Shown piece by piece: positions 1-55,903 of a DNA stretch of 64,000 bases. The DNA comes from Podarcis bocagei (lineage: Eukaryota): assembly GCA_964188305.1 (NCBI GenBank), contig OZ076886.1; one strand, written 5' to 3'. The position numbers and the translations under genes were made by a program. A model generated the notes under the pieces. That model was not told the DNA's origin. It did not search any database and was given only the letters and a program-made list of their open reading frames with translations. How positions within the stretch are numbered: the first letter of the stretch is position 1; each line of letters opens with the position of its first letter.

Positions 1-312
1 TATTGAAAGAACCAAAGTTTAAATGTTAAATACAACAATATGTTTTATTTTTAGAGTAAATGGATAATAAGGGATTTAAACTTAAATTGCAATTGAAAGT
101 ATAAAGGAACACATGAAACAAGATTATAATTTGCTGACAAATTTATTGTTAAGAATGCATTGTGCGGGAGATGTGGGGAAGTTCGATAGAAAGATGAAGT
201 AAGCTGTTGAAAAGTCATACTTTTTTCTTCTTTTGTCTTTTATCTTTTTGTTTCTCTTTCTTCTGTTTATGTTTGAAAAAATGTAATAAAAACTATTTAA
301 AAAATAAATAAA
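1..312 (+). mobile_element. Probable LINE (L1-like) 3' end with A-rich tail
   Basis: AT-rich sequence, T-rich 3'UTR-like tract (220-270), AATAAA and A-rich tail (285-312); family assignment by resemblance only. Confidence 0.35.
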
Positions 313-1689
313 TGTGTATCTGCCTCAAATATGTAGGAAGTGGAGGAGACTGGTTTTAATTGGGGTGCAGATGAGAAGTGTAGAACCCTTCTGCTGCTCA
401 TAGCTTACACCTCTCTTCAAGAGCAGCTAAGGAGAATTCTTTTTGGGGAAACCAATGGTCTTTGTTGTGAAATCTTTGTTAAGATGCAGAGTTGAGCACT
501 CCTAAACCATGAACCCACTTTTCTTCTTAAAATGGACCCCTGCCCCTATGACTGGGGCAGATCCATATATAAACACATGGTTTGCCACGATCATATCCGA
601 GTTTGGCTGTTAATAGCATACATGCAAATTATTCTACAGGGTACATAACAGTGAAACATAATGATGCTAGTAATGACCTCCCATCAAAATGTGGTTATTA
701 AGGAAAGGCTATATTCAGTTTCTCATCTACATGCAGTATTCCAGTTAATATTTATAGCGTGCCCTCTGGGCTATAGTTAAAACAGGGAATCATATTTTTC
801 TACAAAATGGCTCCTTCGCTCCTGAATTCACGGCTTGGGCAATTAGTGGCCTGAAACTGGAAAAAAGAAATAGTGATTCAGACTTGCCAGTTGAATTCAC
901 AACCCAAAACTTCACTCTGCCATCACGGATGTGACTTTCCCCTCTGCTTCAGACCACATGAATGGCAGAGGGGAGAGCCCAATCCAGCCAGCAACATTTT
1001 CTTTGTGTTATCTGAGCAGGCAGTTCTTTCTAATTTAATTTAATTTTGATTAAGGTAGCTGTAGGAGTGGAACGTAACATGAGAGTCAGGAAAGCAGGCA
1101 GGAAGACTAACTCAGAGGCACAGAGAAAAAACAGAGACTGAAATAAGAGAACAAGAACCAGGATGTGACTCAGCACAATTGCAATGGGGGAGGGAGGAGA
1201 AACAGGCCAGTGGAGGTTTAGCAGGCTTTCAGTTAAAAAGAAAGGCTTTATTTTACATATGTCCTCTGACTGACAGTTAAATAATAGCAAGCACCTTTTG
1301 AAACAAAAACACCTGCCATAGTTCCCTCCCCTTCTTTTGTCATTAACAGTATAAATAGATAGAAACTATAAATCCCCCCTTTGCAGTTCTGGCTTTCCTT
1401 GTTTCATTTTGTTTTTCAGCCTTCCTTTATTGCAAAATTTCAAACTTCTGCAGCCGCAGTCCGATAACTAAAGGATGCTTTTAAAAATAAAGGGGTGGGG
1501 GGTGGGAATAGGAAGAAGGGAAGGTCAGGAGGAAAAGTGCCTGCTAATAAATCTGCATTTTTTTCCCCAGGCTTCATTAGCCCATGCCAGGCCATCATAG
1601 TTGACAGGCCTTAGCTCCAATCAGATGATTCTGCTCCTGGTCAGCAACTCCTCTCCTGGCATCCTGGCATACAGCACAAGTATTGAAGG

Positions 1690-2021
1690 CAGCGGCAGGG
1701 CATATGGTGCATATAACCCATGGCAGGGTGTGGAGAGTGCCCCCCCAAGCGCGGGACAGCTGCTCAGGTGCATGGAGCTGCGCAAATTCCCTGCCGCCAA
1801 TGGTGGATATTCAGCACACCGCCTGCCTGTGACTCCCAAGCCTCCCTCAGCTATCAAAACAAAGGGAGAATACCACCGGCAAAGCAGCACAGCTCCCCCC
1901 TTCCCCCAACGGCTTGAAGTAGGCTTGGGAGTCACGGGTGGGCAGCACACCAAATGTCACTCCCTCAGCAAAGACACCCAGGGTGGTCCACCCCCACTGC
2001 ACCCCCCTTCCCCCGCCCCTG
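1690..2021. mobile_element. hAT (Tip100-like) non-autonomous element
   Basis: Perfect 8-bp TSD ATTGAAGG (1682-1689, 2022-2029); termini CAGCGGCAGGG / CCCCGCCCCTG; internal inverted repeat (GTGACTCCCAAGCCT / AGGCTTGGGAGTCAC). Confidence 0.75.
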
Positions 2022-2169
2022 ATTGAAGGGTGTGCATAAGCTTTCACGTGATATGGAGCTATCATCACTTGGGGTGCAATTCCTCCCTTCAGGCATTTAT
2101 GCTGCCTGCATGACCACTGGAGGTAGAACTATTTGGTACTGATGGGATGCTAAGTGTTAAGATCTAAAG

Positions 2170-2305
2170 CAGGCATAGGCAAACTCAGCCCTCCAGATGT
2201 TTTGGGACTACAACTCCCATCATCCCTAGCTAACAGGACCAGTGGTCAGGGATGATGGAAGTTGTAGTCCCAAAACATCTGGAGGGCCAAGTTTGCCTAT
2301 GCCTG
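2170..2305. mobile_element. 136-bp palindromic hAT (Charlie-like) MITE
   Basis: Near-perfect hairpin CAGGCATAGGCAAAC...GTTTGCCTATGCCTG; perfect 8-bp TSD ATCTAAAG. Confidence 0.9.
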
Positions 2306-2828
2306 ATCTAAAGGTTTGTCTCATTCTCCATGCATGGATGTCAAGGGGATGGGGCCAGGCAGTAGGAGGCAAGGGCAGCAACACAGCTTCCCTTCTGTTT
2401 GTCCTCACTAGCCATCATGAAGAAGGACATTTTGCTAGTTTTTGATAAAATAGAAATCACAGTATTCTAAATCTTCACCCAGTATAACTGAGCTTGACAA
2501 TGGCTAGGCAAACAAATGGGTTTGTTGTTATGTAACAGATTTACATTAAATAGAGTGCTTTCCCCCTATCCCTCATCCTTTCTAGCAATGAAAAGAATAG
2601 CAAAGGCTTTTATTACCTCTGCAAGGCTAAGGTCCCACTTGCCTGGTTATCCCAGTTTGTGGCTGGGCGGTCCCTTCAGTTTTTCTGGCAACAAGCTGCC
2701 CATACGATAGACCTCTTCTCTTCTGTGAATGTGTGCAAATTCTATTTTTAAAACCAACCAAGCTAGGAATAGTGTGTAAAGGAAGCTAAACTCTCAGTAT
2801 AATTTGTGACTGCGCACCTTTTGTGTGA

Positions 2829-2995
2829 GGCGGTATGGTGAATGTCAGAGTAGGACTGAGGACACTTGTGCCCAAATTCCCCCACCCATCTCCATGAAGT
2901 TGGAAGGGCAGAGAGTGATGACTTTGGGATAGGCCAGTCATAGTGGTAGAGTTGGAAGGACCAAAAAGGCCATCAAGTCCAACCCCCTACAGGAA
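2829..2995. mobile_element. Degenerate CORE/MIR-like SINE fragment (+) followed by CR1-type 3' tail fragment (-)
   Basis: Resembles the copy at 36100; TCATAG...GAGTTGGAAGGACC...CATCAAGTCCAACCCC is the reverse complement of the CR1-type tail at 52880-52944. Confidence 0.45.
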
Positions 2996-3104
2996 TCACA
3001 GCTAAATAATAACTCCACTCTTAAATCCCAATACATTCCTAGCCATGACCATCCCTCCTTCTGTTCTGAGAGCCATGGAGACCTCGATGTACCATAGTAA
3101 TCTA

Positions 3105-3480
3105 TGCATTAAAGCAGTCTTTGAGTACTGCATCCCCTGGTGAGAGCCAGTACATCTCCAGTACTGCCATCCTCAAGCATCTGAAGGTCTCCAGGCTCCT
3201 CAAAAAACTCTACTCTGTCTGCCTTGCTTCCCCTTATGCTTGGAGCTGTCTCCTGGAACAACTGCATGACGCTACCTCTGTTATTTCCTTTAAATGCCAT
3301 CTTTTCGTTGAAGCCCTTGGAGTAACTCACCTCTAGACTCCATACCCACTACTCTACTGAGTTAAAGAAGATGAAAAAAAGCATCTTCTCCCCCTGTTTA
3401 CTTTACTTCTTTTCCCTTATTTTGTCCCCCGTCTGTTGAATTTTAAATTGTAAGCCCCTTGCGATAGGAGGCATGTTTTC
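3105..3480 (+). mobile_element. Old L2 LINE 3' fragment
   Basis: Decayed L2 C-terminal/3' signature (GCTTCCCCTTATGCTTGGAGCTGTCTCC...TTTAAATGCCATCTTTTC...TTGTAAGCCCCTT). Confidence 0.5.
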
Positions 3481-4607
3481 TCATTCTTTTAAAAAGTCCC
3501 ATGGACACAGCCAGTTTGAAGACCCGCTTAGTCTTAGAGAAAGGGAGGCTTCCGTAACGACAGCCAATCCAGCTACACAATCAGCACAACAGCAACAATG
3601 CAAACATTGTCCTCCCAAGAAGACCTTGACTGTCACAAGGTGGGCAACCATTTAATTAAACAGGGAGTTTTTTTGAAATGCTGGGTCAGAATGAACTAAT
3701 AAAAAATATTCAGACACCTCATATCTAATACTTTACCTCTTTCGACCCATCAAAGTATTTCAATGGATCCTTTGTTTCTCCTCAAGCTGACAACTGACAC
3801 TCATTTCCTGGATAGCAAAAGGCCCATTCTGCTCCTACCAATGGCACAACATTTATTTAGTAAAAAAATAGAATTAAAGGGGTGGGAGGCAAACACCCTA
3901 CCCCCTTTAGCCTTATATATTGACATAGTCCTGGACTTTACCTTTTAAAGGATGACATATGGGTTATGGAAGCCACAAAGGCAACAGTAAGTTCCATCAC
4001 TGCAGAGATACATTCAAAAGTGATTGACAAAGTGCTAATCTAATGGCTGGAAACACATGAAAAGAAACTGAAAGTTATTGTTCTGTGTATTTCATATATG
4101 CAGACTTGTCAAAGAAACATATGACACACATTTTTGAGATGTGAGAGTAATAATTTTGGAACAGGAGCACTACAGAGAAGCATTCCAGTCCAAAACCTTT
4201 AGATGGAAATAATTTCTTTTGATGTCAGTGGAAGTTGCTTCCAAAAAAATGTAGTCTAGGATTTCAAGCACCTGTCTACCAAATGTAGTGTTGGCATCTG
4301 TTAATGAAAAATATTCCCAAACTATCTGTGGCTCTCCACTTCATTAAAAAAAATATAGAAGCTAAGGTGGGTAACGTGGGGTTTGCAGTCATCTCTCACC
4401 CAGATGCTGACTCGATCCAAACATGCTTAGCTTCAGTAAGAAGCTTCAAGTGGTCAAACAGACCCATGAGGGCCCAAACTTGGCAAGAGGTGCAAAGATA
4501 TACATGCCGCCTTCACCCAACTCTCAGTGTAGATGTGCATGGTGCCCCACCCATTCCTCTTTGGACCTTTGCATTCCAGTGTAAAGATCCATAGAGAGGT
4601 TCTAACC

Positions 4608-4744
4608 CAGGCATAGGCAAACTCGGCCCGCCAGATATTTTTGGGACTACAATTCCCATCATCCCTGACCACTGGTCCTGTTAGCTAGGGATCATGGGAG
4701 TTGTAGTCCCAAAACATCTGGTGAGCTGAGTTTGCCTATGCCTG
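4608..4744. mobile_element. Palindromic hAT MITE (same family as 2170-2305)
   Basis: Same TIRs; TSD TTCTAACC/TTCTAAGC. Confidence 0.9.
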
Positions 4745-5596
4745 TTCTAAGCATTCATTGGTAGATGTTATCCTTCCTTTAATCAGCAGCCCTGATTGTG
4801 CAGAATCCCCAATCATGAGGGGGTTTCTAACCATTGAGAGAGGAGCTGGCACATGAATGGATGCTGGGGGCATGTCGTGTTTGAGTTTCTGTTATGACGG
4901 CTTTTCAGCTCTGTACGGATGCTCATGAAAGTGGCAGGACAGGCATGGAAGCAAACACAGGTTATCTTTAAACCATCCAAGTTGACACAAGGAAAAGACT
5001 GAGGTGTGGTAGAACTCATCCTGCTTTGCTGCCGCTAAAATTACAGAGCACTGGCCCAGACATCATTATGCAAAGTCTCAACAGTGCTCACCATTTGAGG
5101 AAAACACTGATTAGCTCCAAACTAACTAGAATAGCCGTTTGAGGTAATGAAGGTCCTTTCAGCACCAGCGTAGCTTTGATTTTATTTACAGATAAAGCAA
5201 ACTTTACCAGGGTATCATTTCCTATGTTAGAGCCTGTATCCAAGAGTGGCATGTTTTCTTGCATCTCACATTTCCCTATAAGCAAAACATCCCACATTAC
5301 CTCACCCAGGGCCAGTTCAGAAAACCAGTAGGCAGAAGTAGTGAACTTCATTTTGCTCTCTAGAGCTCAGCATGGACCAGAAATTGTGGAGCACAATGGA
5401 AGCTTAAAGCCTTTATTCTGCACTTTATTTCTTATTTTTACAGGCTTTCCCAGAAGAATGGGTTGACTCACAGACTGTATCTGATTTCGTTTTTGAGAAA
5501 TGTTTTGTCTATTTTTATCTGTTGCATTTCTGTTGCTTTATCTTTTTTTATGTAATGTTTGGCAGTTTATAAACTTTCCAAAATAAGTGAATTTTA

Positions 5597-5608
5597 TACA
5601 CACGCACG

Positions 5609-5647
<39 letters not shown>

Positions 5648-5648
5648 A
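5597..5648. repeat. (CA)n microsatellite
   Basis: Seen directly. Confidence 0.95.
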
Positions 5649-5784
5649 CTAGAGTTCCCTTCCCCATTTTTTTTTTATTGTGTACACAACAAAAAATGTA
5701 AAATTACACCAGCTCATCATCCAGTTACAACCATGGCATTTTGACTACAAATCAAAACTAGTAAGAAACAGTTTTGAGTGTTAT

Positions 5785-6340
5785 GTATCCTTCAAATCAA
5801 GCACCTCTGATGACCATCGTTTTGTCAAATGCTCTTTGTTAGAAATCTCTAGCCCATTGACAAACTACAGTTACTAGCTTTCCAGAAGACAGTGATAAGC
5901 ATTGATCAGGTTTGAAACCAGCTTACATTTATAGCGTAAGATTGTACTCCAACTCAAGAAACATTGTCATTGAAAGAGGAACAAAGCCTGTTTTGTACAC
6001 AATGAGCATGACCACAGATTTCCCTCTCTCCCAATATTTTCCTGGGATGCCATGTTCTCGTATATAGGCTTTTGTGATGTTGAACTAACCCTCCCCCCCC
6101 CACACACACAATCAGTGGTGATCCTTATTATGACAACACAAAAATGCCTCCAGTTGGCACAGCACACAAAGATGTAGCAACGTCTGCAGCATTCCCAGGA
6201 TCAGGCCATGCAATAAAAATCCATGGAAGCCAGTTCCTTAATGACACAATTGTGTCCACAGTGAATCCAAAATGCAACGCACAATGTATTGGGAAGTGAA
6301 AGAAGAAGCAACTCCTCCCACCAAACCTTTTGCCTTCAGA
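5785..6340 (-). promoter_or_regulatory. Copy 1 of duplicated candidate Pol II promoter (TATA, Inr-like site, Sox sites)
   Basis: Direct-repeat homology with 12763-13350; minus-strand TATAAAT at 5933-5927; TCA(+1)AT 30 nt downstream (5903); ACAAAG-CCTG-TTTTGT at 5981-5996; CCAAT near 6031. The duplication is certain; promoter function is inferred. Confidence 0.5.
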
Positions 6341-6667
6341 GCTTTCTGGAGATAGCCTCAGCCTTTTAACCTAAAAAGAAATGAAGATATATTAGCTAAT
6401 ATATATTAGCACTTGTGAAGGGCTGTGCAGTTGTAATTCATCCAGAACTGCCTGTGCCAGGGCTGGGCAAGCCCTCCACATGCTGTTGCACTCCTGCTCT
6501 CATTTTCCCTCACCTTTGGCCATGCTGGCAGGTCTGAAGGGATCTGGAATCCACCAATATCCACCAACCTTGGACACAAAAAGTGGGGAGTGTAGCTGGA
6601 AAGCTGATATTGTTTAATTTGAACAAAATGGTAATTAGACATATTAGGTGCATATGTTGATTAAGCA

Positions 6668-7410
6668 CGGGGTATTCAAACTTTTTAAACAGGGGGCTGG
6701 TTCACTGTCCCTCAGACACTGTCGGGGGCTGATGGGAAGTTTTGGAGAGTGGGTTGGTGTGCTCGTGGGAGCTGGGTGCCTCGAAAGCCGGGAGCCTACA
6801 GGAGCTGACCAAGAGTGGCACGCACTGTCTGATGCTCCGCTTCAAGGAACATGGACACTGAGACAAGGATGAGCTGGTGACTCACTTGCAGCTGCCGCCC
6901 CATGCAGGTGTTTCCTCCCCTTCACCTTCCTGCTCCCTGGAGGTAAAGGCCACTTCATCACCAGCCTCATCATCCTCCACCGTCACGTTGGCCACCAATG
7001 GGAATGCGACGGTGGCAGCCCCGCTGAGTCCTAGCCCAGGCCAGCTATCCTCCTCCAGGAATGCTGCTGCCACCCCCCATGGGGACGCAGAGCGGCAGCA
7101 GCCACAGGAGCACTAGGGTGGCGGGGGCGGGAGGAAGAGGCCAAGCAGCGGGCGGCTCCGCCAATCAAACGCCGTGCCTGGTTTACCTCAGAACAGCGTG
7201 GGGATGACTCTGCCAATCAAGCACCGCACTGCGCTGAGGTAAACCAGGCGCGGCGTTTGATTGGTAGAGCCACTGCTGCTCAGCCTCTTCCTTCCGTCAC
7301 CGTCGCTGGGAATCTCGGCTTCGCGGCAGGTTCTTAAATGGCTGGGTGGGCTGGATTTAGAGCTCTGGTGGGCCTGATCCAGCCTGGGGGCCATAGTTTG
7401 CTGACCCCTG
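6668..7410. mobile_element. hAT (Charlie-like) non-autonomous element, GC-rich
   Basis: Termini CGGGGTATTCAAAC / GTTTGCTGACCCCTG; TSD ATTAAGCA/ATTAGGCA; internal inverted repeat about 7130-7292. Confidence 0.8.
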
Positions 7411-9044
7411 ATTAGGCATTTAAATGCCAGGCAATGTCAGGGATAGTGTGCACCCAAATTATATATAGATAGAATGTGCTCAGTTTCTGTACGTAGACTG
7501 CCCAAGCTATATGTTTTAAAACTCCTACTTGCTTTTGCCTGGAACCTCCTCTTCTGGTAACACTTTGCCACGCCCTTGTAAATAACCTGTGTCCCTGTTA
7601 GTTACTGAGCTAAGGCAAAGTCATAAATAATGGTTACTGCCACTGATACAGGGGGTAAGCATGGACTAGAGCACACTTTGTGTCCTTTCAGCTGCAGTGT
7701 TGTGTCCAATGGGAAATTTGTGCAGTTGGAAAATGTACTTTGAAAAACCTGGAGTCCACCAACAACTAGAAGGGCACAGATTCTTCATACGTGTCCTGCA
7801 CACTTACACACATACGTACTGAAACCAATCCAGGAAATAAAAGAAGGCTGCAGAGAAATAGAGGGAAACCTACAAATGGAGGGAAGAGGAGAGCAAAGAG
7901 CCACAACAGTGACTGAGAAGAAGCAGAGCAGACCTTTCCTTTCACAGGAGCTCCTGGAGAGGCTGTCCCATGGAAAATTATAAAGGAGCTCCCAGCTCTT
8001 ATTTTGGGTGCAGAGCATTCATTGGTAGGTCTTTACTCCAAGTTTGCAGCAGCAAACTTAGATCCATGGCTTTGAGCCAGTGGAGAATGCAACAGCCATT
8101 CCTGAGCAAGGGAAATATTTGGGCAGGGGCAGGTGGTGGTATTAAACAGCCTTGCCTCTTGCATTTCTGGAAATTAGTCTGATTTAAAAACAAAAACAGG
8201 CAATTTTTGTGGATTGTATTTTTTATTTTTTTCTGGCACATTGGCAACTCTAATCATGAGCAGGAAAAAGTGAGGTCTCCTGTCTGGTCGGCCTCCTGCT
8301 CATGTTTTGTACCGAGAAGTTACATTTGTGTTCTCCCTGCGACTGCAGTCATAGAACCTCTTATTTCCAGTAATAGCTGTGATTCATTCTCCTTCTATTG
8401 TGCTAAAGTTCAGATAGTGTGGCTTTTTGTTAAGGATTCTAATCAGAAATAATATGTCATTAGACCAACTGCTGTACGGGATGGATCAGCAATCATCCCT
8501 ATCTGGCACTTATTTTGGCAGACAATGATGTTATAGTTGTTTGCTAACATTTATGCTTGCAGGTATACGTTAGTTTGTGGGTCATATTCTAACATTCCTT
8601 ACATTGCACTAGGACACACACACAGAAACACACACAAAAAATACGCATCACAGTCTCTAAACAAGTCAGTCAAGCTTTATTTATTTATATCCCCCTTTTT
8701 CTGCAACTACTGCACTCTTGAGGGTGCCTCCAGCTGACCTGTTTAATGAGCATTCATTCTGCTTTGCTTGCACAAGGCTTATGCAGAGGTTAGATTACAC
8801 CCGGTCTGAGCATTCATTTGGATTTGTTTGTGGGGCAGTTATAGGACCATAAGCATTCATTCTGAATTTATTCCCCCATCTTCCCACTGATCAAGTCCAT
8901 ACTCTATCCATTATTCCACACTGGCCTGGTTTGTACAACATGGTCAACCAGAGTATAGCTTGCTGTGGCTGTGCAGATGTGCTGGCTCTTGGTGAGTTTG
9001 TGCCCACTTTGTGCTTGCTTCCTCCCCAAGTCAGCACACGATAG

Positions 9045-9375
9045 CAAGTAAACCAAGATTTGGCTTAGCATGTTGTCTGAACCCATGATCAAGGTTAAGG
9101 TTTCTCCTCTTAAACCATGAACTATAATAACCATAAGACAAACCTTGGCCACAGATCATGGTTAAAGAGAAGAGACTTCAACCACAATCCCAAACTGAGA
9201 TGTCACACTAAACCACCCCTTGCTGCACTGCCCTAGAAAGCCCGGGGGGGGGGAGCTGTGATCTCCTCCATGGGTGCCAGCATGTCCACACATTCATGCT
9301 AAGCCATGGGTTGGGTTGGCATGTTGTGAAAATGTGGCCAGTGACTCCATGGGCTTGTCCACACTGGGAGACTGC
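9045..9375. mobile_element. Degenerate MITE (AAACCATG/GCTAAGCCATGG-type)
   Basis: Recurrent motifs shared with about 500-620, 23270-23310 and 24585-24620; boundaries approximate. Confidence 0.35.
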
Positions 9376-11094
9376 AAAAGTGTGTGTTGAGAATTTATAG
9401 TTGACTCTTTGCTTTTGCATACTTCCTGGGCTGGGATTCATTAAGCAAACAAACAAACAAACAAACAAACAGAACCAAGATGCACACGAAGCTATCTGTT
9501 CACATGCCCAGCTGGTACTTAACTGGCATAATAGAACCAACAAATTAGAAGGTGGGGACAAACACAAAAGGGAATTCCTACTACTATCAATGGAAAAGAC
9601 CAATGTTGCTCCTCATATACAGATTCAAATATCTGTGGATATGTGCAACGTGGTCTAATTCAAATGTGGAGGAAGTGGATTAACAACTAAACAATGCTCA
9701 AATGTGGACCAGCACTACAATTCACATTCACATACAGTAACCCCCCCCCCACACACACACATACACACATGAGCCAGGGAAGAATTTCCCTGCCTGGATC
9801 AAAATTTAATCCAATAATGAAGACACAATAAGAACGCAGACATCTATTTCAGTGAAGACATCTGACCTGTCAGTTACAGAAACAGATTAATCTAATTAGA
9901 GCTTATTATGGGATAAAGTGCTCATTGTTTTAAAAATCAGAGGGAGAAAGAAAAAGAGAGGGAAGCCTGATCTGAATTACCAAAATGTTGCCTGATAATT
10001 CTATTATTATGCACTTTGTAATGCCCTGGAAGCTTCTTTAAATAAGCACTGCTGTGGACTTTGATTTTAAAAAAATTATAAACCTCATAGCATTCTTGTA
10101 TTGTATCTTCATCTTCAGCAAAAAGAGGCATCACCATTGCCGGACCATTGCATAAGCGACCTGTTTGAAATGTGATAAAAACAAAAAGTAACCAGGGAAT
10201 GTGCATATTGCCTGGAGAATGTACTAAATGCTGTCAATATGCAAATTCTCCAAGGCCTGTTGGAGATTATGTGTATTAACTGGAAAATGTGTACAATTTC
10301 CCTTCTTAAACAGATTATATGCTCATTCTCCATGAAGCCTGGTGAACATGCACAATGGTCAGTTGTTATATACATTAACCATTCGGCTTACATTACCACT
10401 AAAATATACATTGGTGCAACTTCAGTTAGGTTTAAATGTGAAATATTTTTCAAATTAATATACACAGAGGATGGTAGCCAACTCAAACTGTCCATCAGTG
10501 CAAGAATCTCCACTTACAGAGCAGAGCTTCTCTCCTCCCCTTTCACCACGTGGCTCCTAAATCTGTTCTCCCAACACCTCTGGAGCAGATTTGGGAAGGG
10601 CACAGGGTGTGCGTGGGGAGAGGGGGAGGCCGGCCCATTGTGCATGAAAAAATCCTTGCACTGACAGATACCACACACTTGTTTTTCATACGCAATGGCT
10701 CTCAGTTACAGAGTTTGCAGAATTTATGCTTCCTGTTCCACGAAGAACATGATTCAGCATTCGTTTAATTCAGTAAAATTCAGACCTTTCGAGTTTGCAC
10801 CACCCAGTTGAACCCTGCCTACCACTTTGTATGGCACTGTGATGAACATTTGCCATTCTGTTAAATGCTCAGCTATTCCTCTCCTCCAGTCCAGGTTGCA
10901 GCTGAATACTGCTACCAGCAACATCATGGCTGAGGACAAACTGTGCATTACTCACACATCCTTAATGCATTGAAACAAGCCGGGCTCCAGGAACTGTAGC
11001 CAGTGGTCAAATGCACAATGCCTGGAGTTTACATACTCTCAAGGGGCCTATGATTTATTTATATTTGATGACTTTGTTGATAGAAATTGTCATT

Positions 11095-11716
11095 GATAGC
11101 TCAGCAGGTTAGCATGTGGTGTTGATACGGCCAAGGTTGCATGTTCGATCCTTGTATGGATGGCAGAGGTTTTCAACCTTTATTGGTCCATGGGTCCCTT
11201 GGCCAACTAAATTCTTTCTGCAGCACCCCTGTGGGGCTCAGCAGCCCAGTAATGTCACCATTTGCCTGCAGAGCCAGCGGCCCCTCACCTCTTTTTGAAC
11301 ACCCTCCCTTGGGGAGTGTTCCTTCAGCCTCCTCTCTTCTCCCCTCTCCTGGGTGGCTGCAGCTGCGCCCCCCCCCAATTTCTGAGGTGCCCCCCCTGCC
11401 CCAAAGAGAGGTGCCTCCTCACACTGCCCCCCTGGAAGCACCCCCTGGCCAGCCCCAGAAGACCATTTACCTACAGAGCTTCTAGCCAGGGCTGCTACAA
11501 CAAACAGCTGTGCAAGCATTTGGAAGGCAGTGATGTGAGAGGGCATCAGACGAGGGAGGGAAAGAAAGAGGGACAGAGGCCAGTGTTGCCTGCGGCACAC
11601 CTGACCAGGGCACCCTGGTCAAAAACCACTGTTGTATGGGATAGCTGCATATTCCTGCATTGTGGGGAGTTGGAATAGATGATCCTCAGGGTCCCCTCCA
11701 ACTCTACCCTTCTATG
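11095..11716 (+). mobile_element. tRNA-headed, CR1-tailed SINE interrupted by a hAT element
   Basis: A box GATAGCTCAG, B box GTTCGATCC; resumes at 11632; ends GGTCCCCTCCAACTCTACCCTTCTATG. Confidence 0.75.
11164..11631. mobile_element. hAT (Charlie-like) non-autonomous element
   Basis: Termini CAGAGGTTTTCAACC / GGTCAAAAACCACTG; TTGTATGG on both flanks (left copy followed by extra ATGG). Confidence 0.75.
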
Positions 11717-12762
11717 TTTCTGTGTTCTTTAAAGGCATAAGCCTGAAACAAATGGACACATATATTTTTTCAAGCTTTCCACAGTGATCTTTACTGTCTG
11801 GGATGAAGACCACACCAACAGTGAGTGTGGGCAGGGCGAGGGGAGCACAGGTCTGTCTGGTCACTGATACTACTTGAGATGCAGAGCACTTTGGAGCAGA
11901 AATTTAATCCATTACTATGTTTGTGAACCCTGCACTGAAACATTACCTTTTGGTTTAGTCTTACAACCATCAAGCTCAGTTACATGGGAGCCCAGGAGAA
12001 GAAAGAAATGCACCGCTAACAATATGAAAATGCTGTCGGCCTCTTTAGAATGTGTGTGAATACATGCTCATCATATATGTTAACCAGGACTCAAGCGACA
12101 TTGGACAGCAGCAGGTCCTCTTATTTCAAACCAAGTCACATATAAGGAGGAACAGAGCAAGCTACCAAGTCTGTCTGCTGGTCCATCTAACTCTGGTTGC
12201 TTTAGTATGCAGATCATGTGCTCTACCACTTTCCTTTTCCTTTTTGGCACTCTCGCCCTTTTGCTCTAAAAATGGATTCTTGATCTCCACCCCTCCATTT
12301 AAATGTGACCAGGACAGGGCCAGGCTCGCCACTGTCAAATTTCATTTGAGCTTGCTCATCCATGTTTCCATTGCTTCCCCAAAAGCAATTGCCAAAATTG
12401 CTTGGATAGTTGTCTGTTCTGATACGGGTTTTCAAAGAAGGAAGATGGCACGTAGGGTCAGACGAGGTTACAGAAAATGTGCTCCTTGCATATCTTTGTG
12501 GTCTCAGTATTGTCTCAAAATGGTTCACAAGGGGGGCTTGCAACAAAGCATTGTGCTACAGCCTGCTCCTATTCGGTGTTCCAGCCAGCCAGCCAATCTG
12601 GAATTCCTCTAGGATACTTCATTTCATTCCCTCTCCCCACTCCAGTTTTCCAGGTCTCCTCTGACAGACAGCCCCCTGTTTGGGTGGGTGGGCCTTCCTT
12701 AAGACCCCCCCCCCAAATAACTTATTGAACTTTTGCAAACCCTGGCACTCCCCTAAACAAAC

Positions 12763-13350
12763 TCTTTCCAATCACCCACCTTTGAGGATTCCGCCTTTTG
12801 TCACATTTCATAGGGATTCCTGGCAAGTAATACGATCAACACAGTTCCTAGCTTCCCATAGGGCAGGGATCATAAGCACTGATCATGTTTGAAACTAGGT
12901 TACATTTATAGTGTAGAATTGCCCTCCAAGGAACATTCTCACTGAGAGAGGAACAAAGCCTGCTTTGTACACAATGAGCTTGACCAGCAACCACAGATTT
13001 CCCTCTCTCCCAATATTTTCCTGGGATGCCATGTTCTTGTATATGGGCTTTTGTGACGTTAAACTAACCCTCCCACTGACAAATACCACCCCCACTGGCC
13101 ATAATCAGTGGAGATTCTTACTATGAGAAAACCAGAAAAAAGCCTCCAGCTGGCACAGCTCACAACGATGTAGCAATGTCTGCAGCATCTCTGGGAGCAT
13201 GCTGTGCAATCAAAAGCCATGGAAGCCAGTTCCTTAATGACACAATTGTCAACTCCTCATATTTCCACAATGAATCCAAAATGCAACGCACAATGTATTG
13301 TGAAGTGAATTGCAGCAGCGAATCCTCCCCACCTGAGTTTGCTATTAAAG
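12763..13350 (-). promoter_or_regulatory. Copy 2 of duplicated candidate Pol II promoter
   Basis: Minus-strand TATAAAT 12910-12904; Inr-like TCAGT with A at 12880; perfect ACAAAG-CCTG-CTTTGT 12953-12968; donor-like AAG|GTGGGT at 12780/12779. Confidence 0.55.
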
Positions 13351-13671
13351 GGGGTGATGGAGCTGGAGAAAAACTTGTTGGCCGTCTAGTGCAATTTCCC
13401 ACTCAGGGCAGGAAATCTGGGGCCAGAAGATACACAACAGCTGCCCGCCCAACCTGTGTTTGAAGACCTCCAATGCACCCATCACTTGGCTTGACTTGGT
13501 CCTTGCACTCTTGGGCAGCAGATGTGGGAAAGACATTCTTTTTGTATCCTTCCCAGTAGTTTTCTTCTCTCTTCCTCTCTCCCCCTCTCTGAACAGGCAA
13601 TATATTACTCAGTCTAACTTCTGACATTTTCAGCTCTACTAATGTGTGCATTTCATTTCATTTTTAAAATA

Positions 13672-13928
13672 CAGTGGACGCTTGGGTTGCGAACATGATC
13701 CGTGCAGGATGCACGTTCGCAACCCGCAGCATCTGCAACCCGCAGTGGCGCATCTGTGGCGCAGGTTGTAATTTGGCGCTTCTGCGCATGCGCAAAATGC
13801 GATTTAGCACTTCTGCGCATGCATGACCATTGAAACCCGAAAGTAACCTCTTCCGGTACTTCCGGGTTTTGGCGGTCCATAACCCAAAAAAACGCAACCT
13901 GAAGCATCTGTAACCCAAGGTATGACTG
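13672..13928. mobile_element. Tigger/pogo-like (Tc1/mariner superfamily) MITE
   Basis: TA|CAGTGGACGCTTGGGTT...AACCCAAGGTATGACTG|TA; internal palindromes such as TGCGCATGCGCA. Confidence 0.8.
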
Positions 13929-14855
13929 TATGTTTTCATCATCAATTCCCATCCAAAGAGGGGGTGTGCTACATGCATGCATACAAACATTTGAATCAAA
14001 GTGTTACCAACTGTAGTTTATTCATTTTCATTAATTTCGCAACATTTATATACCATTTGATTGTAATACAGCCTCCAAGCAGTTAAAACACAAAAACCAC
14101 ATTAAAATTATCAATAAAAGACTGCTAAAAATAGGTGTTTAAAACATTCAAAAGATAATGAAAAATCAGCAGCAAGAAAATGAGATTAAAACACATGTCA
14201 GCATACCGCATGTCTGGCTAGGTAGGTGTAGTCTTTTTATTATTATTATCAGATACGACACACATGTTTTGCCAAGATCTTCTGCAACCTGGCTGCGAGA
14301 GCTGCCCAGGCATGGTTACAAGCTACATTTAAGGAGAGGAGGTCAAGAATAGAAATGAATAAATATATGGCTAGATAGAAACTCTATGCAACAGTGGGCT
14401 GGCCGGGTGGGGACATGGAACTGGCCTAGCTTGCTAGGTTGGCAGAGACAAGTTCAACAGCAAGGCTGGTATTCAGCAGAGCTGTTATCAGGTCTGCAGA
14501 AGGGCATCTCCCAAGAAGCGGCAGTGGAGGCAGACACCAGGCTGGTGAGGGAGAGTTCAGCTGCTGATGACTCAAGGGTCGTGACTCAGCACCTTTGGTT
14601 GGGTGTGGTTCACTGCAACAGCAGCAGCTGCAGTCACAACTGAGTCTCCTGATACTGACTGAGAGGAAAGTATCTATTAAAGCAGATTAATCATTGCTTT
14701 GGAGACAGTTTTGGATGGACTAGCCTCCTCTTTGAGCATAAGCCTAGGACGCCTTAGCAGTACTTATCAGCTCACGGCTCGGGGTGGCTCAGTGTTGGTT
14801 TCCCCCTCTCTCTGTGCAGCAGGTTTCCTCTGCAAGCAGAATAACAACAACAACA

Positions 14856-16495: not shown

Positions 16496-16967
16496 CAGTG
16501 GCGTAGCATGGGGGGTGCCAGGGGTGCCGGCCGCACCGGGCGCAACATTTGGGGGGGCGCGTTTAGCCGGCCCTCCTCGAGGAAGCAGGAACCCCACTGT
16601 CCTCGGACCTCCTCCAAAGGCTGGCGGTGGGGCGGAGAGACTTCCTCCCGCCGCCAGCCTTCGGAAGGCTGCTCCGAAGCCTGGCGGTGGGGCGGAGAGA
16701 CCTTCTCCCCGCGCCAGCCTTCGGAAGGCTGCTCCGAAGCCTGGCGGTGGGGCGGAGAGACCTTCTCCCCACGCCAGCCTTCGGATGGCTGTCCTGAAGA
16801 CTTGTGGTGGGAGCAGTGGCGTAGCGTGGGGGGTGCAGGGGGGCCTGCTGCACCTGGCGCAACATCTGGGAGGGGCGCGGAAGAGGCTCGAGTGCTAAAA
16901 TCCACGGGTTAGGGGGCGCAAATTACTTGCCTTGCCCCGGGTGCTGAGAACCCACGCTACGCCAGTG
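16496..16967. mobile_element. hAT (Tip100-like) element with internal 3 x 60-bp minisatellite
   Basis: TIR CAGTGGCGTAGC / GCTACGCCAGTG; perfect TSD CCCCCTTG; 60-bp units at 16621-16800; second left-end copy near 16814. Confidence 0.9.
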
Positions 16968-19661: not shown

Positions 19662-19990
19662 CCAAAAGGCAGGGTGTAAATGTTTTTGGGAAATGAAATG
19701 GTGTAACCCTACCCTGCAGCGCTCAGGCAAATCACAAAGAGGCACAACTCCACCCAGTGCCCAACACCACGGCACATTCAGTGGCAGGAGTCCAGGGGAA
19801 TATAGGAAGCTGATGGGGGGGGGCTTTCCACTGACTGTAAGGAAAATTTTTCTTAACTTTTGCCTCCTCTAATGCCCTAGTAGCATTATGCTGTCCCTGG
19901 TGGCTATTCACATCTCCCACAGTGCCTCATAGTGATGCTATGCCAGGAGCACTATGGGAAATTTAAACAGTGTCTCCTTGAATCAGCCTA

Positions 19991-20233
19991 CAGTGGTACC
20001 TCGGGTTACAGACCCTTCAGGTTACAGATGCTTCAGGTTACAGACTCCGCTAACCCAGAAATAGTACCTCGGGTTAAGAACTTTGCTTCAGGATGAGAAC
20101 AGAAATCGGGCTCTGGCGGCAGCAGAGGCAGCGGGAGGCCCCATTAGCTAAAGTGGTGCTTCAGGTTAAGAACAGTTTCAGGTTAAGAACGGACCTCCGG
20201 AACGAATTAAGTTCTTAACCTGAGGTACCACTG
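19991..20233. mobile_element. Tigger/pogo-like MITE
   Basis: TA|CAGTGGTACCTCGGGTTA...TAACCTGAGGTACCACTG|TA. Confidence 0.9.
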
Positions 20234-20514
20234 TATTTTAAAAAAGGGAATTTGTGGCATTGGTGCAGATGGCAAGATTTCTCACGCCAAAGTGCAAGGG
20301 TTAATTTGTTTTTCACGTGCTAAACATGTAATAGCAAGAGTCACACAGGGTGCGGAGCTGATTAACAGCTCTCGCTGCATCCAGAGAGCCCTGGCTGCAA
20401 ACTGGGCTCACAATTGGGATGGGGAGTGTTGCTTAGCAACCAGGTGGAGCCAAAGAAGTTGCCTTCAGCCTGGGTTTCTTGAACGTAAAGAGGCCAGTGT
20501 GCTTTTATACATTT

Positions 20515-20723
20515 AGTTCCATTTCGTACATTTATTTCCCAGTTTTCCTTCAAGGAATCCAAGGTGGCATACATGGTTCTTCCTTTGTCTGTTTTCTCCT
20601 CACAACAAAGCTATGAGGTAGATTACGCTGACAGTGACTGGCCCAAGGTCACCTAGTGAGCTTCATGGCTGAGCAAGGATTCGAACCCTGGTCTCCCAGG
20701 CCCTAGTCCAACCCCTACACCAG
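20515..20723 (-). mobile_element. CORE/L2-tailed tRNA SINE (Squam3/MIR-like)
   Basis: Reverse complement of the 36100-36345 family; B box seen as GATTCGAACCC. Confidence 0.75.
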
Positions 20724-20775
20724 TGTACTGGAAAGAGACTAGCATTTTTTGTACGCTACCCCAATCTCTGAGTGG

Positions 20776-21304
20776 TGTGAGATTCTTGGGGTTTGAGGCG
20801 CTTACCCAAGGTTCATGTTTCCTTTTGGGAATGAGGCACAGCGGAGACAGTGGTGTCTTTATGATATATGGTTTATTTACACATATTTACAATCTGAACC
20901 TCTGATGGAGGCGTTCACTGCATCAACACCCCGAAAAGGGTCTTGCTTCTCCCATAGCCACAGCCTTGGATTGAAACAGGCATCAAACATAACTTTCTGA
21001 CTTTCTATCCAGCTTGATGCTTTACTTATAGTTTGCATCACAGGAAGCTCTGCTTGCAGCTCAGGAATTATCCTTACAACTATCTAAGAGTTGAAGGAGG
21101 AGCACCATCCATTTGTTATTTGGCAAAGAGGCTCCTTTCCTTCGTTCTCTTAATGGCCGATCACCTAGGCGATCACCTCAACAGGATGCTAGCCTGCCTT
21201 ATATTTTAACACTTGCTAGATCAAGGGATTCAGGAAGCTAGCCTGGCTTTTGATTAGCTTCCAACACTTGCTAGATCCAGGGATTAAAGGGGTATGGCAC
21301 CCAC
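20776..21304 (-). mobile_element. Possible solo LTR
   Basis: TGTG...CACA termini, TTTATT (reverse polyA signal) near 20872, internal direct repeat AACACTTGCTAGATC x2; no convincing TSD. Confidence 0.35.
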
Positions 21305-21459
21305 AAACTCATAACACTATTCAGTATGTGTAGTGGTTTCATTCTGTTAGTTGCCTGGTTCGCTCTTCCCTTCAATATGTCTGACTGCTTCAGCTCTGCT
21401 TGTGCACTACTAGTTTCGACAACAACACAAACAATGTAACAGGCTGTATGTAACTGTAT

Positions 21460-21660
21460 AAATTCTTTTTCAAATGCAATTCAACATATCATATAAAAAT
21501 ATATGGTTCTATAGACCAACTTACCAAATAAACAAAACGTATTATGAGAAATTAAAGTCCAGCATGTTGACCAGGAAATACAATCTATTCAATTCTTATA
21601 TTAGCAATATCCACGGTGTGGAATTCTAATATCTTGTAGAGTTCCACGTGAAGATGCATT
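21460..21660 (-). mobile_element. Possible L1-like fragment
   Basis: AT-rich, decayed RT C-terminal-like sequence; weak. Confidence 0.25.
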
Positions 21661-22149
21661 TTGTGTGTGTGTGAAGATGGTTTTAAGAATTCTAGCGTTC
21701 CTCATATGCAGGTTTCAGACGAAGAACTTGGAAGAATGGTACATGCAGAAAACAAGACAAGGATTCCAGGATAATTCCTTGTTTTGCCTTGTCTTATTTT
21801 CTGGATTCAGTCTGCTCTATTCAGCCACTTCTGCTAACGTGCTGGAGCATGGCAGCCCTAACAGTGGCCAGGAGGCTTTGTAAATGCTGGTTATTATAAA
21901 CACAGCATATGGTATTAATTGGCGTATTACAAGATGTTTAGGCTTCTCTAAAAGTAAAGTTGCTATAGTGTTCACCTTCTGCTTTAAACATATGGAAGCA
22001 GAGCACAGCAAGTCTTTCAACAGTCAGCTTCAGGTGGAAAAGAAAAAAGGAAAAGGAAACAAATGGCAACAATAATATCAGAGGAAAAAGCTGGAGGAAC
22101 CCATGAAATCAGACTATTTAAGGCTTTCAGCCATCATACATGATTGTGC

Positions 22150-22540
22150 TTTAGAGAGCTAAAAGCCAGAATAACATTGACTAGCTGATGAGTGTAAAGA
22201 CCATCAATGGCAAAAAGTGAATACCAACTAAACTGTAAATAAGAAAATACTACGCCTTTACCTATATAAAAGAGCAACTGCTTAAAACCAGGCAACATAG
22301 AAATAATAAATAAAGCAAAAAAAAATTAAATACAAGAAAAACCAAAAGATATCTGTAAAAGCACATTATACAGTTCTTACAAATAGAAGAGCAAAGTGTT
22401 ATACATTGAACATACATATTGGTGTACATAGAAAATAGAAGGAGAGAGCGGGGATATAGGATTGTCAGATATATTTTATTGACTCAACCATAGTCTTAAA
22501 TGTTGGATTTAATTTTTTAATAAATAAATAAAAAAATGAA
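22150..22540 (+). mobile_element. Possible L1-like 3' end
   Basis: Strong A skew ending in AATAAATAAATAAAAAAA. Confidence 0.35.
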
Positions 22541-23353
22541 GAAAACAATTCATCTTCAAACTGAGAGGAATTTTGTTTTTGTATTTTTTAAAAAAGAAAA
22601 TTAAAAACCTGACATTTATCAGGAAACTGCCCCTTCTAATGAAATAGCCATTTTCCATTGGGGGGCGGGGAGCCAGTTCTAAACATCAGGGCCTCAAACC
22701 AGTACAAAACCTACTGAATACAAAGAATTCAGCACTGTGTTGGATTGCAGCCCAGAACTATGTCAGACTCCCAGATACGAAAGGTTGCATTTTAGCTAGC
22801 TGGATCATGGGACCAGCAGCCAGACTCCTTGTTGCCCCATGATACCCGTCTGACAGACAAGCTGGACTGTAAAATGAAAGACTCTGGAGTTTCTGTGTCA
22901 TCTAATGCAAGAGGTCAGCTTCTAATGCAGAATAAAGTACTTATTCCCCACTGGGTCCTAAGAATCTGAGCTTTAGTTTGTGTTCTTTTTGCTTTTTATT
23001 TTGCAGGTTTCTTGTTTAAGGGGAAAACTGTCAACGTATCCTGGGGACTTAGACAAATGTTAGCAGAGCCAGTAGGCCAAGACACTTCTCTGGAGTGAAG
23101 CAGTAAATGATACCTCCTCCCTCCCCAAATCAAGGTGCATAATACTTAAGGCACCTCAGGCAGAAAATTGTACAAGTGCTTCTCTGTCTCTCTGGCAGTA
23201 AAAATACAGTAACAACACATTAGGTAACAAACGGTGAGCAGCCCTTTCATGACACTCTGGGGGAGACAAACCATAAGCCCATGTCTGGATGTACCGCTAA
23301 GCAGCAGTGTAGTGGCAGATTCAGAAGTGATTTTGAAGGATCTCTTCTTTATA

Positions 23354-23566
23354 CAGTGGTACCTCGGGTTAAGTACTTGATTCGTTCCAGAGGTCTGTTC
23401 TTAACCTGAAACTGTTCTTAACCTGAAGCACCACTTTAGCTAATGGGGCCTCCCGCTGCTGCCGCACCGCCGGACCACGATTTCTGTTCTTAACCCAAAG
23501 TATTACCGGTATTTCTGGGTTAGCGGAGTCTCTAACCTGAAACATATGTAACCCGAGGTACCACTG
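23354..23566. mobile_element. Tigger/pogo-like MITE (opposite orientation to 19991)
   Basis: Same TIR CAGTGGTACCTCGGGTTA; TA TSD. Confidence 0.9.
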
Positions 23567-24185
23567 TAGTCACAGCCACACACCCTTCTAAAGCTATACA
23601 ACATTCTAAGGTTACACAATAATCTTATAATTATAGAATAATGATAATTTGCTATTGGTTGCAATGATCAATGCTGCTCTCCATGTGTCGCCTTTCAGCT
23701 AGGTCTACTATTTTCTGTGCGTGTACTTGGGCAAATTATTTGGAGCACTCCAATATCTCCTTTTGGAGAAGTTCTGTTTTCCTCAAAGTTCCATTCTACA
23801 AAAGAGAAGCTGCATGCCATTCTCTTGAAACCAAAGCACCATGTGTTTTCAGTGTTCCTAAGTGCTGAGCTGTGGAGCACACATGACTCCTCGGTGTTCT
23901 TTTTGCACGGCTTCTCCAGAGTGACCTCAGGAGCCAATCCTTAGTGGCGTACTCACTTCCTTTCACTCTGATTGGCTCCAATCAGCCCAAAGGGTGAGAA
24001 GGTTTCTTCTCAATGGGTAAAATCATGCTACTTGGGCAGCTCATTAGAGGCAGAGACCTAGTTATGGAAGAAACAGGAATGGGTTTTCAACACTGGACCA
24101 CCTCACCTATGCTGCTAAGCGAAACCTGGGCAGCGCAGCAGCAACATGACCAGGCGAGGGCACAGCGGCAGAAACCTTCGCTGTA

Positions 24186-24563
24186 AAAGGTAAAGGTAAA
24201 GGACCCTGGGATGGTTCAGTCCAATCAAAGGCAACTATGGGGTTGCGGGGCTCATCTTGCTTTCAGGCAGAGGGAGCCGGTGTTTGTCCACAGACAGGTT
24301 TCCAGGTCATGTGGCCAGCATGACTAAACTGCTTCTGGCACAACAGGACACTGTGGCGGAAACCAGAGTGCATGGTAACACCGTTTCCCACCACAGCGGT
24401 ACCTATTTATCTACTTGCACTGGTGTGCTTTCAAACTGTTAGGTTGGCAGGAGCTGGGACAGAGCAACGGGAGCTCACCGTGTGGTGGGGATTCGAACCG
24501 CCAACCTTCCGATAGGCAAGCCCAAGAGGCTCAGTGGTTTAGACCACAGTGCCACCCGTGCCC
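24186..24563 (-). mobile_element. Sauria SINE (Squam1-type)
   Basis: (AAAGGT)n tail, tRNA-like head with B box GATTCGAACC; TSD CTTCGCTGTA/CTTTGCTGTA. Confidence 0.92.
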
Positions 24564-28129: not shown

Positions 28130-28504
28130 AAAAAAAGGTAAAGGACCCCTGACAGTTAAGTCCAGTCGCAAACGACTCTGGGGTTACGGCGCTCATCTTG
28201 CTTTACTGGCTGAGGGAGCTGACATGTGTCCACAGACTATTTTTCCGGGTCATTGGGTCAGCATGACTAAGCCGCTTCTGGCGAAACAGGAGCAGCGCAC
28301 AGAAACGCCGCTTACCTTCCCGCTGGAGCGGTACCTATTTATCTATTTATCTACTTGCACTTTGATGTGTTTTTAAACTGCTAGGTGGGCAGGAGCAGGG
28401 ACCGAGCAATGGAAGCTCACCCTGTCACGGGGAATTGAACTGCCAACCTTCTGATCGGCAAGCCCTAGGCTCTGTGGTTTAGACCACAGTGCCACCCGCG
28501 TCCC
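28130..28504 (-). mobile_element. Sauria SINE
   Basis: Full length; perfect 12-bp TSD TTGCTCTTAGTA. Confidence 0.95.
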
Positions 28505-55319: not shown

Positions 55320-55903
55320 GCCTGACTCCCAAACATGTGTGGATCTTCAGCCACAGCATAGTGCATTGGGCAGCTGTCCATGCCACCACGGGTTCATCTG
55401 GCAAACATCAGGGCCTTCAGCCGAAGGTCACCATTTCCTGGTTTGGCCATCGTGGAATGTGCTCGGATGCACCTTGGTTGCGTCAAGAGCTTGCGTTCCG
55501 TCCCCCGCCAGATGCGGTTGTGTTCCACCTTGGCGAAAATAACTTGGTTGTTTGTAAGAGCAGAGTGCTGATGAAAACAGCAATCACAGACTTGGAAAGC
55601 TTACATGCCATGCACCCTAACATAACTATTTTCTGGTCAGAACTCCTCCCACTCTTACAATGGCGTGACAACCTCAAACCCACCAGACTTAACTACACTA
55701 TCGAAAAAATAAATAGGGCACTGCGCTCGGCAACCTCGTGCATCGGGGGTCGCGTTGTGAAGCATCCCAGCATCAAAATCTACCAGGAGGAACTCTTCAG
55801 GCCTGACGGAGTACACCTCTCAGCCATTAGTAATGATTATTGGCTGAGCGACCTTAGGCATGCCCTTTTGGAATGGATGGCGAATGGCGAAGGGTCTGTT
55901 TAG
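55320..55903 (+). CDS. SGNH/GDSL-family hydrolase ORF of the Ngaro element (open, no ATG start)
   Basis: Blocks VWIFSHSIVHWA (S), GHRGM (G), PDAVVFHLGENNL (N), DGVHLS (H); preceded by a 3' splice-site-like sequence. Confidence 0.8.

What the first reader, a model, noticed from the sequence alone, without database searches (positions are those of the whole stretch)
5785..13350. Tandemly duplicated TATA/Inr promoter with SoxE-type dimer site, driving an unidentified minus-strand transcript pair
Seen: about 550 bp at 5785-6340 recurs at 12763-13350, with a much better conserved core and no TIR, TSD or LTR hallmarks. Both copies keep minus-strand TATAAAT with an Inr-like TCA exactly 30 nt downstream (5903, 12880). 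Both keep a head-to-head ACAAAG-CCTG-YTTTGT followed by ACACAATG, plus ACCACA and CCAAT motifs. Both have a donor-like AG|GTG 99-101 nt after the putative start (5805, 12780). Known: head-to-head ACAAW-N6-WTTGT sites bind SoxE (Sox8/9/10) dimers. Inference: two paralogous tissue-specific promoters (pigment cell, glia, cartilage or testis) for a fast-evolving small gene or lncRNA pair that I could not name.
Basis: partly seen in the sequence, partly recalled or inferred. Interest (0 to 1): 0.75.

Follow-up and report, generated by a model that had tools for sequence, protein, structure and literature searches.

The report
Duplicated Sox-site regulatory module, function untested
A roughly 550-base non-coding piece of lizard DNA really is present twice, 7 kb apart, with patchy conservation and a textbook SOX9/SOX10 dimer site, which suggests a duplicated gene switch; whether it starts transcripts, as first proposed, could not be tested.

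Summary
Window 5788-6326 recurs at 12763-13336 in the same orientation (blastn core 79% over 494 columns, E 4e-122; 85% without gaps). A profile search finds no third copy in 64 kb.

- **Sox site.** Copy B carries ACAAAG-N4-CTTTGT exactly and copy A carries it with one mismatch. This is the commonest SOXE dimer motif reported by Huang 2015.
- **Patchy conservation.** Identical runs reach 44, 33 and 30 nt. The upstream part is 83-88% identical and the putative exon 1 only 65%.
- **Boundaries.** Homology stops about 17 nt past the donor-like GT.
- **Excluded.** It is not coding, not a structured or known RNA, CpG-poor, and has no TIR, TSD or LTR ends. The DNA downstream of the two copies shares nothing and holds no recognisable gene.

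The promoter reading stays untested. TATAAA with an Inr-like site at that distance occurs at 10 of 57 TATAAA sites here. Donor A is weak.

My best reading is an old local duplication of a constrained cis-regulatory module, promoter or enhancer, about 27 and 34 kb from the noted CPEB4 leader. Rivals are a low-copy transposon relic and a neutral duplicate homogenised by gene conversion. The finding is ordinary in kind and of modest interest.

The parts
5788..6326 (-). Copy A of the duplicated module (about 540 nt)
12763..13336 (-). Copy B of the duplicated module (about 575 nt; carries a local 19-nt duplication at 13062-13097)
5927..5933 (-). TATAAAT, copy A
12904..12910 (-). TATAAAT, copy B
5805..5903 (-). 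Putative non-coding first exon A (99 nt), from the Inr-like TCA (A at 5903) to AG|GT. Only 65% identical to B. Transcription not tested.
12780..12880 (-). Putative non-coding first exon B (101 nt). Transcription not tested.
5799..5807 (-). Donor-like site A, GAG|GTGCTT (weak: lacks +4A and +5G)
   Evidence: read directly; consensus from general knowledge
12774..12782 (-). Donor-like site B, AAG|GTGGGT (8 of 9 consensus positions)
   Evidence: read directly
5981..6004 (.). Sox palindrome ACAAAG-CCTG-TTTTGT (1 mismatch to the SOXE dimer motif) followed by ACACAATG, copy A
12953..12976 (.). Exact SOXE dimer motif ACAAAG-CCTG-CTTTGT followed by ACACAATG, copy B
6015..6058 (.). Longest identical run (44 nt; matches B 12994-13037); holds the inverted CCAAT box and lies next to ACCACA
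6221..6253 (.). 33-nt identical run (matches B 13217-13249) with the palindrome ACAATTGT
6262..6291 (.). 30-nt identical run (matches B 13271-13300) with ACAATG

Best explanation
An old local duplication produced two same-orientation copies of a roughly 550-nt, CpG-poor, non-coding cis-regulatory module. Parts of both copies have since been kept by selection. The module is a cluster of Sox sites built around a canonical SOXE (SOX8/9/10) dimer palindrome, with further conserved blocks. It would be bound by SoxE dimers in a SoxE-expressing lineage (pigment cell, glia, cartilage or gonad) and switch on transcription. The nearest known gene is CPEB4, whose leader lies about 21.5 kb before the window start. 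Shown here: the duplication, its limits, the patchy conservation, the motifs, and the absence of coding or RNA-structure signal. Inferred: selection, Sox binding, any transcription, and the target gene.
For: Only two copies exist in 64 kb. They lie 7 kb apart in the same orientation, and a profile search finds no third. That arrangement is far more likely for a local duplication than for two independent insertions of a dispersed family. No TIR, TSD or LTR ends are shared. Conservation is uneven. Identical runs reach 44, 33 and 30 nt. With gap columns removed, the longest run reaches the observed value in 166 of 10000 permutations and the window variance in 65 of 10000 for the core; for the whole homology the counts are 16 and 0 of 10000. 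Upstream blocks are 83-88% identical against 65% in the putative exon 1. ACAAAGNNNNCTTTGT is exact in B and has 1 mismatch in A, against 0.43 hits expected per window at up to 1 mismatch. It is the most abundant SOXE dimer motif in melanoma-specific open chromatin and binds SOX8/9/10 cooperatively (PMC4445065). ACAAWG occurs 6 times in copy A and 5 times in B, against 1.9 per kb in the window. For the promoter sub-reading: the TATA-to-Inr block is 84% identical, and homology runs through AG|GT and stops about 17 nt later.
Against: There are no expression, open-chromatin or cross-species data, and genome-wide copy number is unknown. Both ends of the homology are sharp, which also fits a mobile unit. 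With gaps removed the unevenness is only moderately significant (p about 0.01-0.02 in the core), and gene conversion could produce it. TATAAA plus an Inr-like site is common by chance (10 of 57). Donor A is weak. There are no shared downstream exons or recognisable ORFs. The Sox-site enrichment is marginal once the roughly 140 possible 450-nt windows are allowed for.
Confidence: 0.5

Rival explanations
1. Two old copies, or fragments, of a low- or medium-copy transposable element or solo LTR of an uncatalogued family. They have no present function, and the TATA box and transcription-factor sites are remnants of the element's own promoter.
For: Most repeated non-coding DNA of about 500 nt in lizard genomes is transposon-derived (general knowledge). 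Both ends of the homology are sharp and the flanks share nothing. The size and layout, about 420 nt upstream of a TATA box and about 115 nt downstream, resemble an LTR. The surrounding window is full of mobile elements.
Against: No TG..CA ends, TIRs, TSDs or poly(A) signal are shared by the copies. There are only two copies in 64 kb, adjacent and co-oriented. Divergence is uneven (65% against 83-88%), unlike neutral decay. Blank protein-word and metagenome searches say nothing either way.
Confidence: 0.2
2. A neutral relic of a small local duplication. The high-identity tracts are kept alike by occasional gene conversion between the two nearby copies, not by function, and the motifs are chance.
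For: Direct repeats 7 kb apart are good substrates for conversion (general knowledge). With gaps removed the unevenness is modest. Promoter-like motif pairs are common by chance.
Against: Three separate identical runs are interrupted by diverged stretches and by 13-14-nt indels. That pattern fits site-wise constraint better than a single conversion tract. The exact 12-base SOXE palindrome is expected only about 0.006 times per window (my estimate from base composition).
Confidence: 0.15
3. A tandem pair of small protein-coding genes, for example defensin-like or epidermal-differentiation-type, each with a non-coding exon 1 and a fast-evolving coding exon downstream.
For: The layout TATA, roughly 100-nt non-coding exon, then donor matches such families (general knowledge).
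Against: BLASTN (word size 7) and TBLASTX find no similarity between 1-5900 and 6300-12900. None of the 7 minus-strand ORFs tested downstream of the two copies (78-131 aa; 10 ORFs scanned in that call) matches Pfam, and all look like random reading frames.
Confidence: 0.05

Closest known systems
SOXE-dimer regulatory elements (ACAAAGnnnnCTTTGT class; Huang et al. 2015, PMC4445065)
   Same: Copy B carries the exact 4-bp-spacer palindrome and copy A a 1-mismatch version. Further Sox half-sites (ACAATG, ACAATTGT) lie nearby.
   Different: Binding has not been tested here. The known examples were defined by open chromatin or ChIP in mammals. This one is a duplicated pair in a lizard, with an unknown target gene.
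Duplicated ('shadow') enhancers, and arrays of alternative first exons that each have their own promoter (protocadherin and UGT1A type; general knowledge)
   Same: Paralogous regulatory units lie in the same orientation a few kb apart. Conservation is confined to the regulatory part, and perhaps to a short first exon and its donor.
   Different: There are only two units. The first exons would be non-coding. No common downstream acceptor has been shown.
Solo LTR of an endogenous retrovirus or LTR retrotransposon
   Same: A discrete unit of about 550 nt with an internal TATA box and clustered transcription-factor sites.
   Different: It has no TG..CA termini, no target-site duplication, no shared poly(A) signal, no other copies in 64 kb, and uneven divergence.

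Membership tests
RNA polymerase II TATA/Inr core promoter | TATA box about 30 nt upstream of an initiator | tested here: met
   TATAAAT starts at 5933/12910 and the A of TCA lies at 5903/12880. The same loose criterion is met by 10 of 57 TATAAA sites in the window, so it discriminates weakly.
RNA polymerase II TATA/Inr core promoter | Transcripts actually start there | not testable with these tools
RNA polymerase II TATA/Inr core promoter | A first exon ending in a usable splice donor, or a poly(A) site | tested here: inconclusive
   Donor B (AAG|GTGGGT) is good and donor A (GAG|GTGCTT) is weak. Homology ends about 17 nt past the GT. No junction data are available.
SOXE dimer binding site | Inverted ACAAAG half-sites with a 3-5 bp spacer | tested here: met
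   12953-12968 is exact and 5981-5996 has 1 mismatch. The motif definition comes from PMC4445065.
SOXE dimer binding site | Cooperative binding or occupancy by SOX8/9/10 | not testable with these tools
   This needs EMSA or ChIP.
Transposable element or solo LTR | Terminal hallmarks (TIR, TG..CA, TSD, poly(A) tail) | tested here: not met
   nothing is shared by both copies.
Transposable element or solo LTR | Many dispersed copies in the genome | tested here: inconclusive
   There are only two copies in 64 kb. No whole-genome search was available, and searches were blank but uninformative.
Tandem gene duplication | Homology of the gene bodies as well as the 5' ends | tested here: not met
   BLASTN (word size 7) and TBLASTX of 1-5900 against 6300-12900 give only microsatellite noise.
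Known or structured non-coding RNA gene | An Rfam match or an unusually stable conserved fold | tested here: not met
   No Rfam hit at E up to 1 inside either copy. Mean folding energies of 100-nt windows are -18 and -21 kcal/mol against a background of -23.

The most novel reading that the evidence does not exclude
The two units may be SoxE-driven distal alternative promoters of CPEB4. In SoxE lineages this would give an mRNA that skips the uORF-rich leader. It requires CPEB4 to lie on the minus strand to the left of the window. That orientation fits the absence of CPEB4 RRM/ZZ motifs from the window but is not shown.
Probability: 0.06. Interest if true: 0.65.

Novelty: new member of a known kind. 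Interest (0 to 1): 0.3.

Why it matters
If the reading is true, this is a clean natural example of a duplicated, Sox-dependent regulatory module in a squamate gene desert next to CPEB4. It could be used to study how paralogous enhancers or promoters are retained. Through the novel reading, it could also explain an unexplained conserved acceptor in front of the CPEB4 start codon. As it stands, it is a well-defined candidate element without functional data. The kind of element is ordinary.

Tried and rejected
- **Coding exon:** rejected. The indels are 13, 14, 7, 4 and 3 nt, no ORF is shared, and no ORF in the copies exceeds 95 aa.
- **Whole-gene tandem duplication:** rejected.
- **Third copy or tandem array:** none found.
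- **Known RNA family or stable fold:** none. The weak SCARNA7 hit at 5584-5747 lies over a microsatellite and squeezes the whole 330-position model into 164 nt, so I take it as spurious.
- **TIR, TSD or LTR ends:** none.
- **CpG-island promoter:** no. CpG observed/expected is 0.12-0.2 in the copies.
- **Pfam scan:** 20 ORFs of the window gave only a weak GDSL-lipase hit in a distant mobile element.
- **Reads:** Nothing was laid, so there is no evidence on expression, junctions, copy number or cross-species conservation.
- **Attempts to reach other genomes through proteins:** the exact look-up of 8 ORFs and a word search with a 66-aa ORF over the conserved core were blank. They are uninformative, because not even the orthologous ORFs of the related species were found.
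- **Metagenome scan:** a 25-mer of the core was blank, as expected.
- **Scan-note look-ups:** searches by sequence, relatives and words were blank or irrelevant.
- widened my stretch by 1,500 letters on its own, to 4285-7840, and so covered those places unintentionally. Local scripts that scanned the whole window only computed on it. The profile search left the places out.
Full report

Yes. Self-BLASTN of 5001-14000 against the window gives one strong pair, 5867-6319 against 12841-13329. It is 79.15% identical over 494 columns, E 4e-122, on the same strand. The repeat finder shows the same pair as blocks of 84-96% identity with spacing 6972-7009. A MAFFT alignment of the minus strands (A1) and local alignments against shuffled sequence set the limits.

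- Homology is significant through the putative first exon (score 43 against a null of 16 +/- 3).
- It runs down to 5788/12763.
- Beyond that there is none (p 0.85), and there is none upstream of about 6326/13336 (p 0.5).
- An nhmmer profile of the two copies finds only these two in the 64 kb; the next hit has E 0.7.

| Feature | Copy A | Copy B |
|---|---|---|
| Minus-strand TATAAAT, first T | 5933 | 12910 |
| TCA with its A 30 nt downstream | 5903 | 12880 |
| AG\|GT, last exon base | 5805 | 12780 |
| Putative first exon | 99 nt | 101 nt |
| Sox palindrome | 5981-5996 | 12953-12968 |

Each palindrome is followed by ACACAATG. ACCACA and an inverted CCAAT box lie in or beside the longest identical run.

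**What the element is not**

- **Not coding.** The copies differ by indels of 13, 14, 7, 4 and 3 nt, and no reading frame is shared.
- **Not a known or structured RNA.** There is no Rfam match at E up to 1 inside either copy. Folding energies are no better than the window background.
- **Not a CpG island.** CpG observed/expected is 0.12-0.2.
- **Not the visible head of a duplicated gene.** BLASTN with 7-letter words and TBLASTX find nothing but microsatellite noise between 1-5900 and 6300-12900. None of the 7 minus-strand ORFs tested downstream of either copy matches Pfam.
- **No shared transposon hallmarks.** There are no terminal inverted repeats, target-site duplications, TG..CA ends or common poly(A) signal.

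**What speaks for function**

*Arrangement.* There are two copies only, 7 kb apart and co-oriented. For a dispersed family of N copies in a genome of about 1.8 Gb (assumed size), the chance of a second co-oriented copy within 7 kb, with none in the other 50 kb, is at most a few per cent. By my estimate it is about 0.004 for N = 1,000 and about 0.05 for N = 30,000. A local duplication predicts this arrangement directly.

*Uneven divergence.* Identical runs reach 44, 33 and 30 nt. With gap columns removed, the blast-aligned core is 85% identical. Its longest run is reached in 166 of 10,000 permutations and its 30-column window variance in 65 of 10,000. Over the whole homology the counts are 16 and 0 of 10,000. 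By segment:

| Segment | Identity |
|---|---|
| -38 to -207 | 88% |
| -208 to -423 | 83% |
| TATA to Inr | 84% |
| Putative exon 1 | 65% |
| 17 nt past the GT | 76% |

Neutral decay of two transposon copies should be even.

*Sox sites.* ACAAAGNNNNCTTTGT is exact in copy B and has one mismatch in copy A. The window has 3 hits at up to 1 mismatch against 0.43 expected from shuffles. Huang et al. 2015 report precisely this sequence as the most abundant Sox dimer motif in melanoma-specific DNase-hypersensitive sites. They also show highly cooperative SOX8, SOX9 and SOX10 dimer binding at 3-5 bp spacers (PMC4445065). ACAAWG occurs 6 times in copy A and 5 times in copy B, against 1.9 per kb in the window. 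That enrichment is nominally strong but marginal after allowing for about 140 possible windows.

**Promoter or enhancer?**

For a promoter:
- The TATA-to-Inr block is well kept.
- The poorly kept 100 nt that follow end in a small conserved island around AG|GT.
- Homology stops about 17 nt later, as expected for a unit of 'promoter, non-coding first exon, donor' followed by a free intron.

Against a promoter:
- The same loose TATAAA plus Inr-like rule is met by 10 of 57 TATAAA sites in this window.
- Donor A (GAG|GTGCTT) lacks +4A and +5G, whereas donor B (AAG|GTGGGT) matches 8 of 9 consensus positions (consensus from general knowledge).
- The best conserved blocks are not the core promoter.
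- There is no downstream exon candidate.

I put the promoter sub-reading at about 0.3 and the enhancer sub-reading slightly lower.

**Expression**

Expression could not be tested. The look-up of sequencing runs listed 17 contig sets from six related organisms that hold at least half of the words of 4500-14000. Genome-wide copy number, cross-species conservation, transcript starts and junctions therefore all remain open.

**Context**

A note of this scan (s1-356523) places the uORF-rich CPEB4 leader 21.5 kb before the window start. The window holds none of a set of CPEB RRM/ZZ peptide motifs, which I recalled from memory, in any frame. It also holds no other recognisable gene. It is therefore probably the gene-poor flank upstream of a minus-strand CPEB4, although that orientation is not shown.

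If the orientation is right, the two units point the same way as CPEB4. This allows the speculative reading that they are distal alternative promoters whose donors use the conserved acceptor 27 nt before the CPEB4 ATG described in that note. I give this reading about 6%.

**Verdict**

The kind of element, a duplicated regulatory module, is well known. Interest is modest until copy number, conservation and transcription are measured.

One search widened my stretch by itself to 4285-7840.

Noticed in passing
window 2165-2310 and 4601-4750: Hairpin (MITE-like) repeats. Arms 2165-2275 and 4639-4749 are 94% complementary. Rfam mir-5408 hits on both strands score 44-60 bits, below the gathering score of 90. 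This looks like a lizard-type palindromic mobile element rather than a microRNA gene.
   Followed up: partly
window 6750-7302: A GC-rich patch (GC about 0.6, CpG observed/expected 0.5-0.57) lies between the two copies. It ends in a 182-nt palindrome (7122-7302, 76%) whose arms carry CCAAT boxes. It could be a foldback element or a weak bidirectional promoter.
   Followed up: no
window 4500-14000: Three small 'RNA?' contig sets of a related organism, from two studies, each hold 5-6% of the sampled words of this stretch (about 500 nt). Their position is unknown because no reads could be laid.
   Followed up: no
window 13350-14000: A CpG-rich stretch (observed/expected 0.72) that looks like a young insertion abuts the upstream end of copy B. 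It may have cut off further homology.
   Followed up: no
window 16609-16811: Three tandem 60-nt units (83-92% identical to the reference copy over an 83-nt span), GC-rich and internally palindromic, inside the only CpG-island-like 500 nt of the first 20 kb (GC 0.67, observed/expected 0.68).
   Followed up: no
window 19988-23569: A unit of about 3.6 kb is bounded by long inverted repeats (for example 20128-20236 and 23351-23459, 95% complementary). The ends look like Tc1/mariner-type terminal repeats.
   Followed up: no
window 24214-24566 and 28155-28506: Three co-linear direct-repeat blocks (80-93% identical) lie 3.94 kb apart. This is either another local duplication or two copies of a SINE-like element.
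   Followed up: no
window 55337-55903: The 188-aa ORF gives a weak Pfam GDSL-like lipase match (E 1e-4, below the curated cut-off). This agrees with the scan note on a Ngaro SGNH hydrolase ORF.
   Followed up: partly
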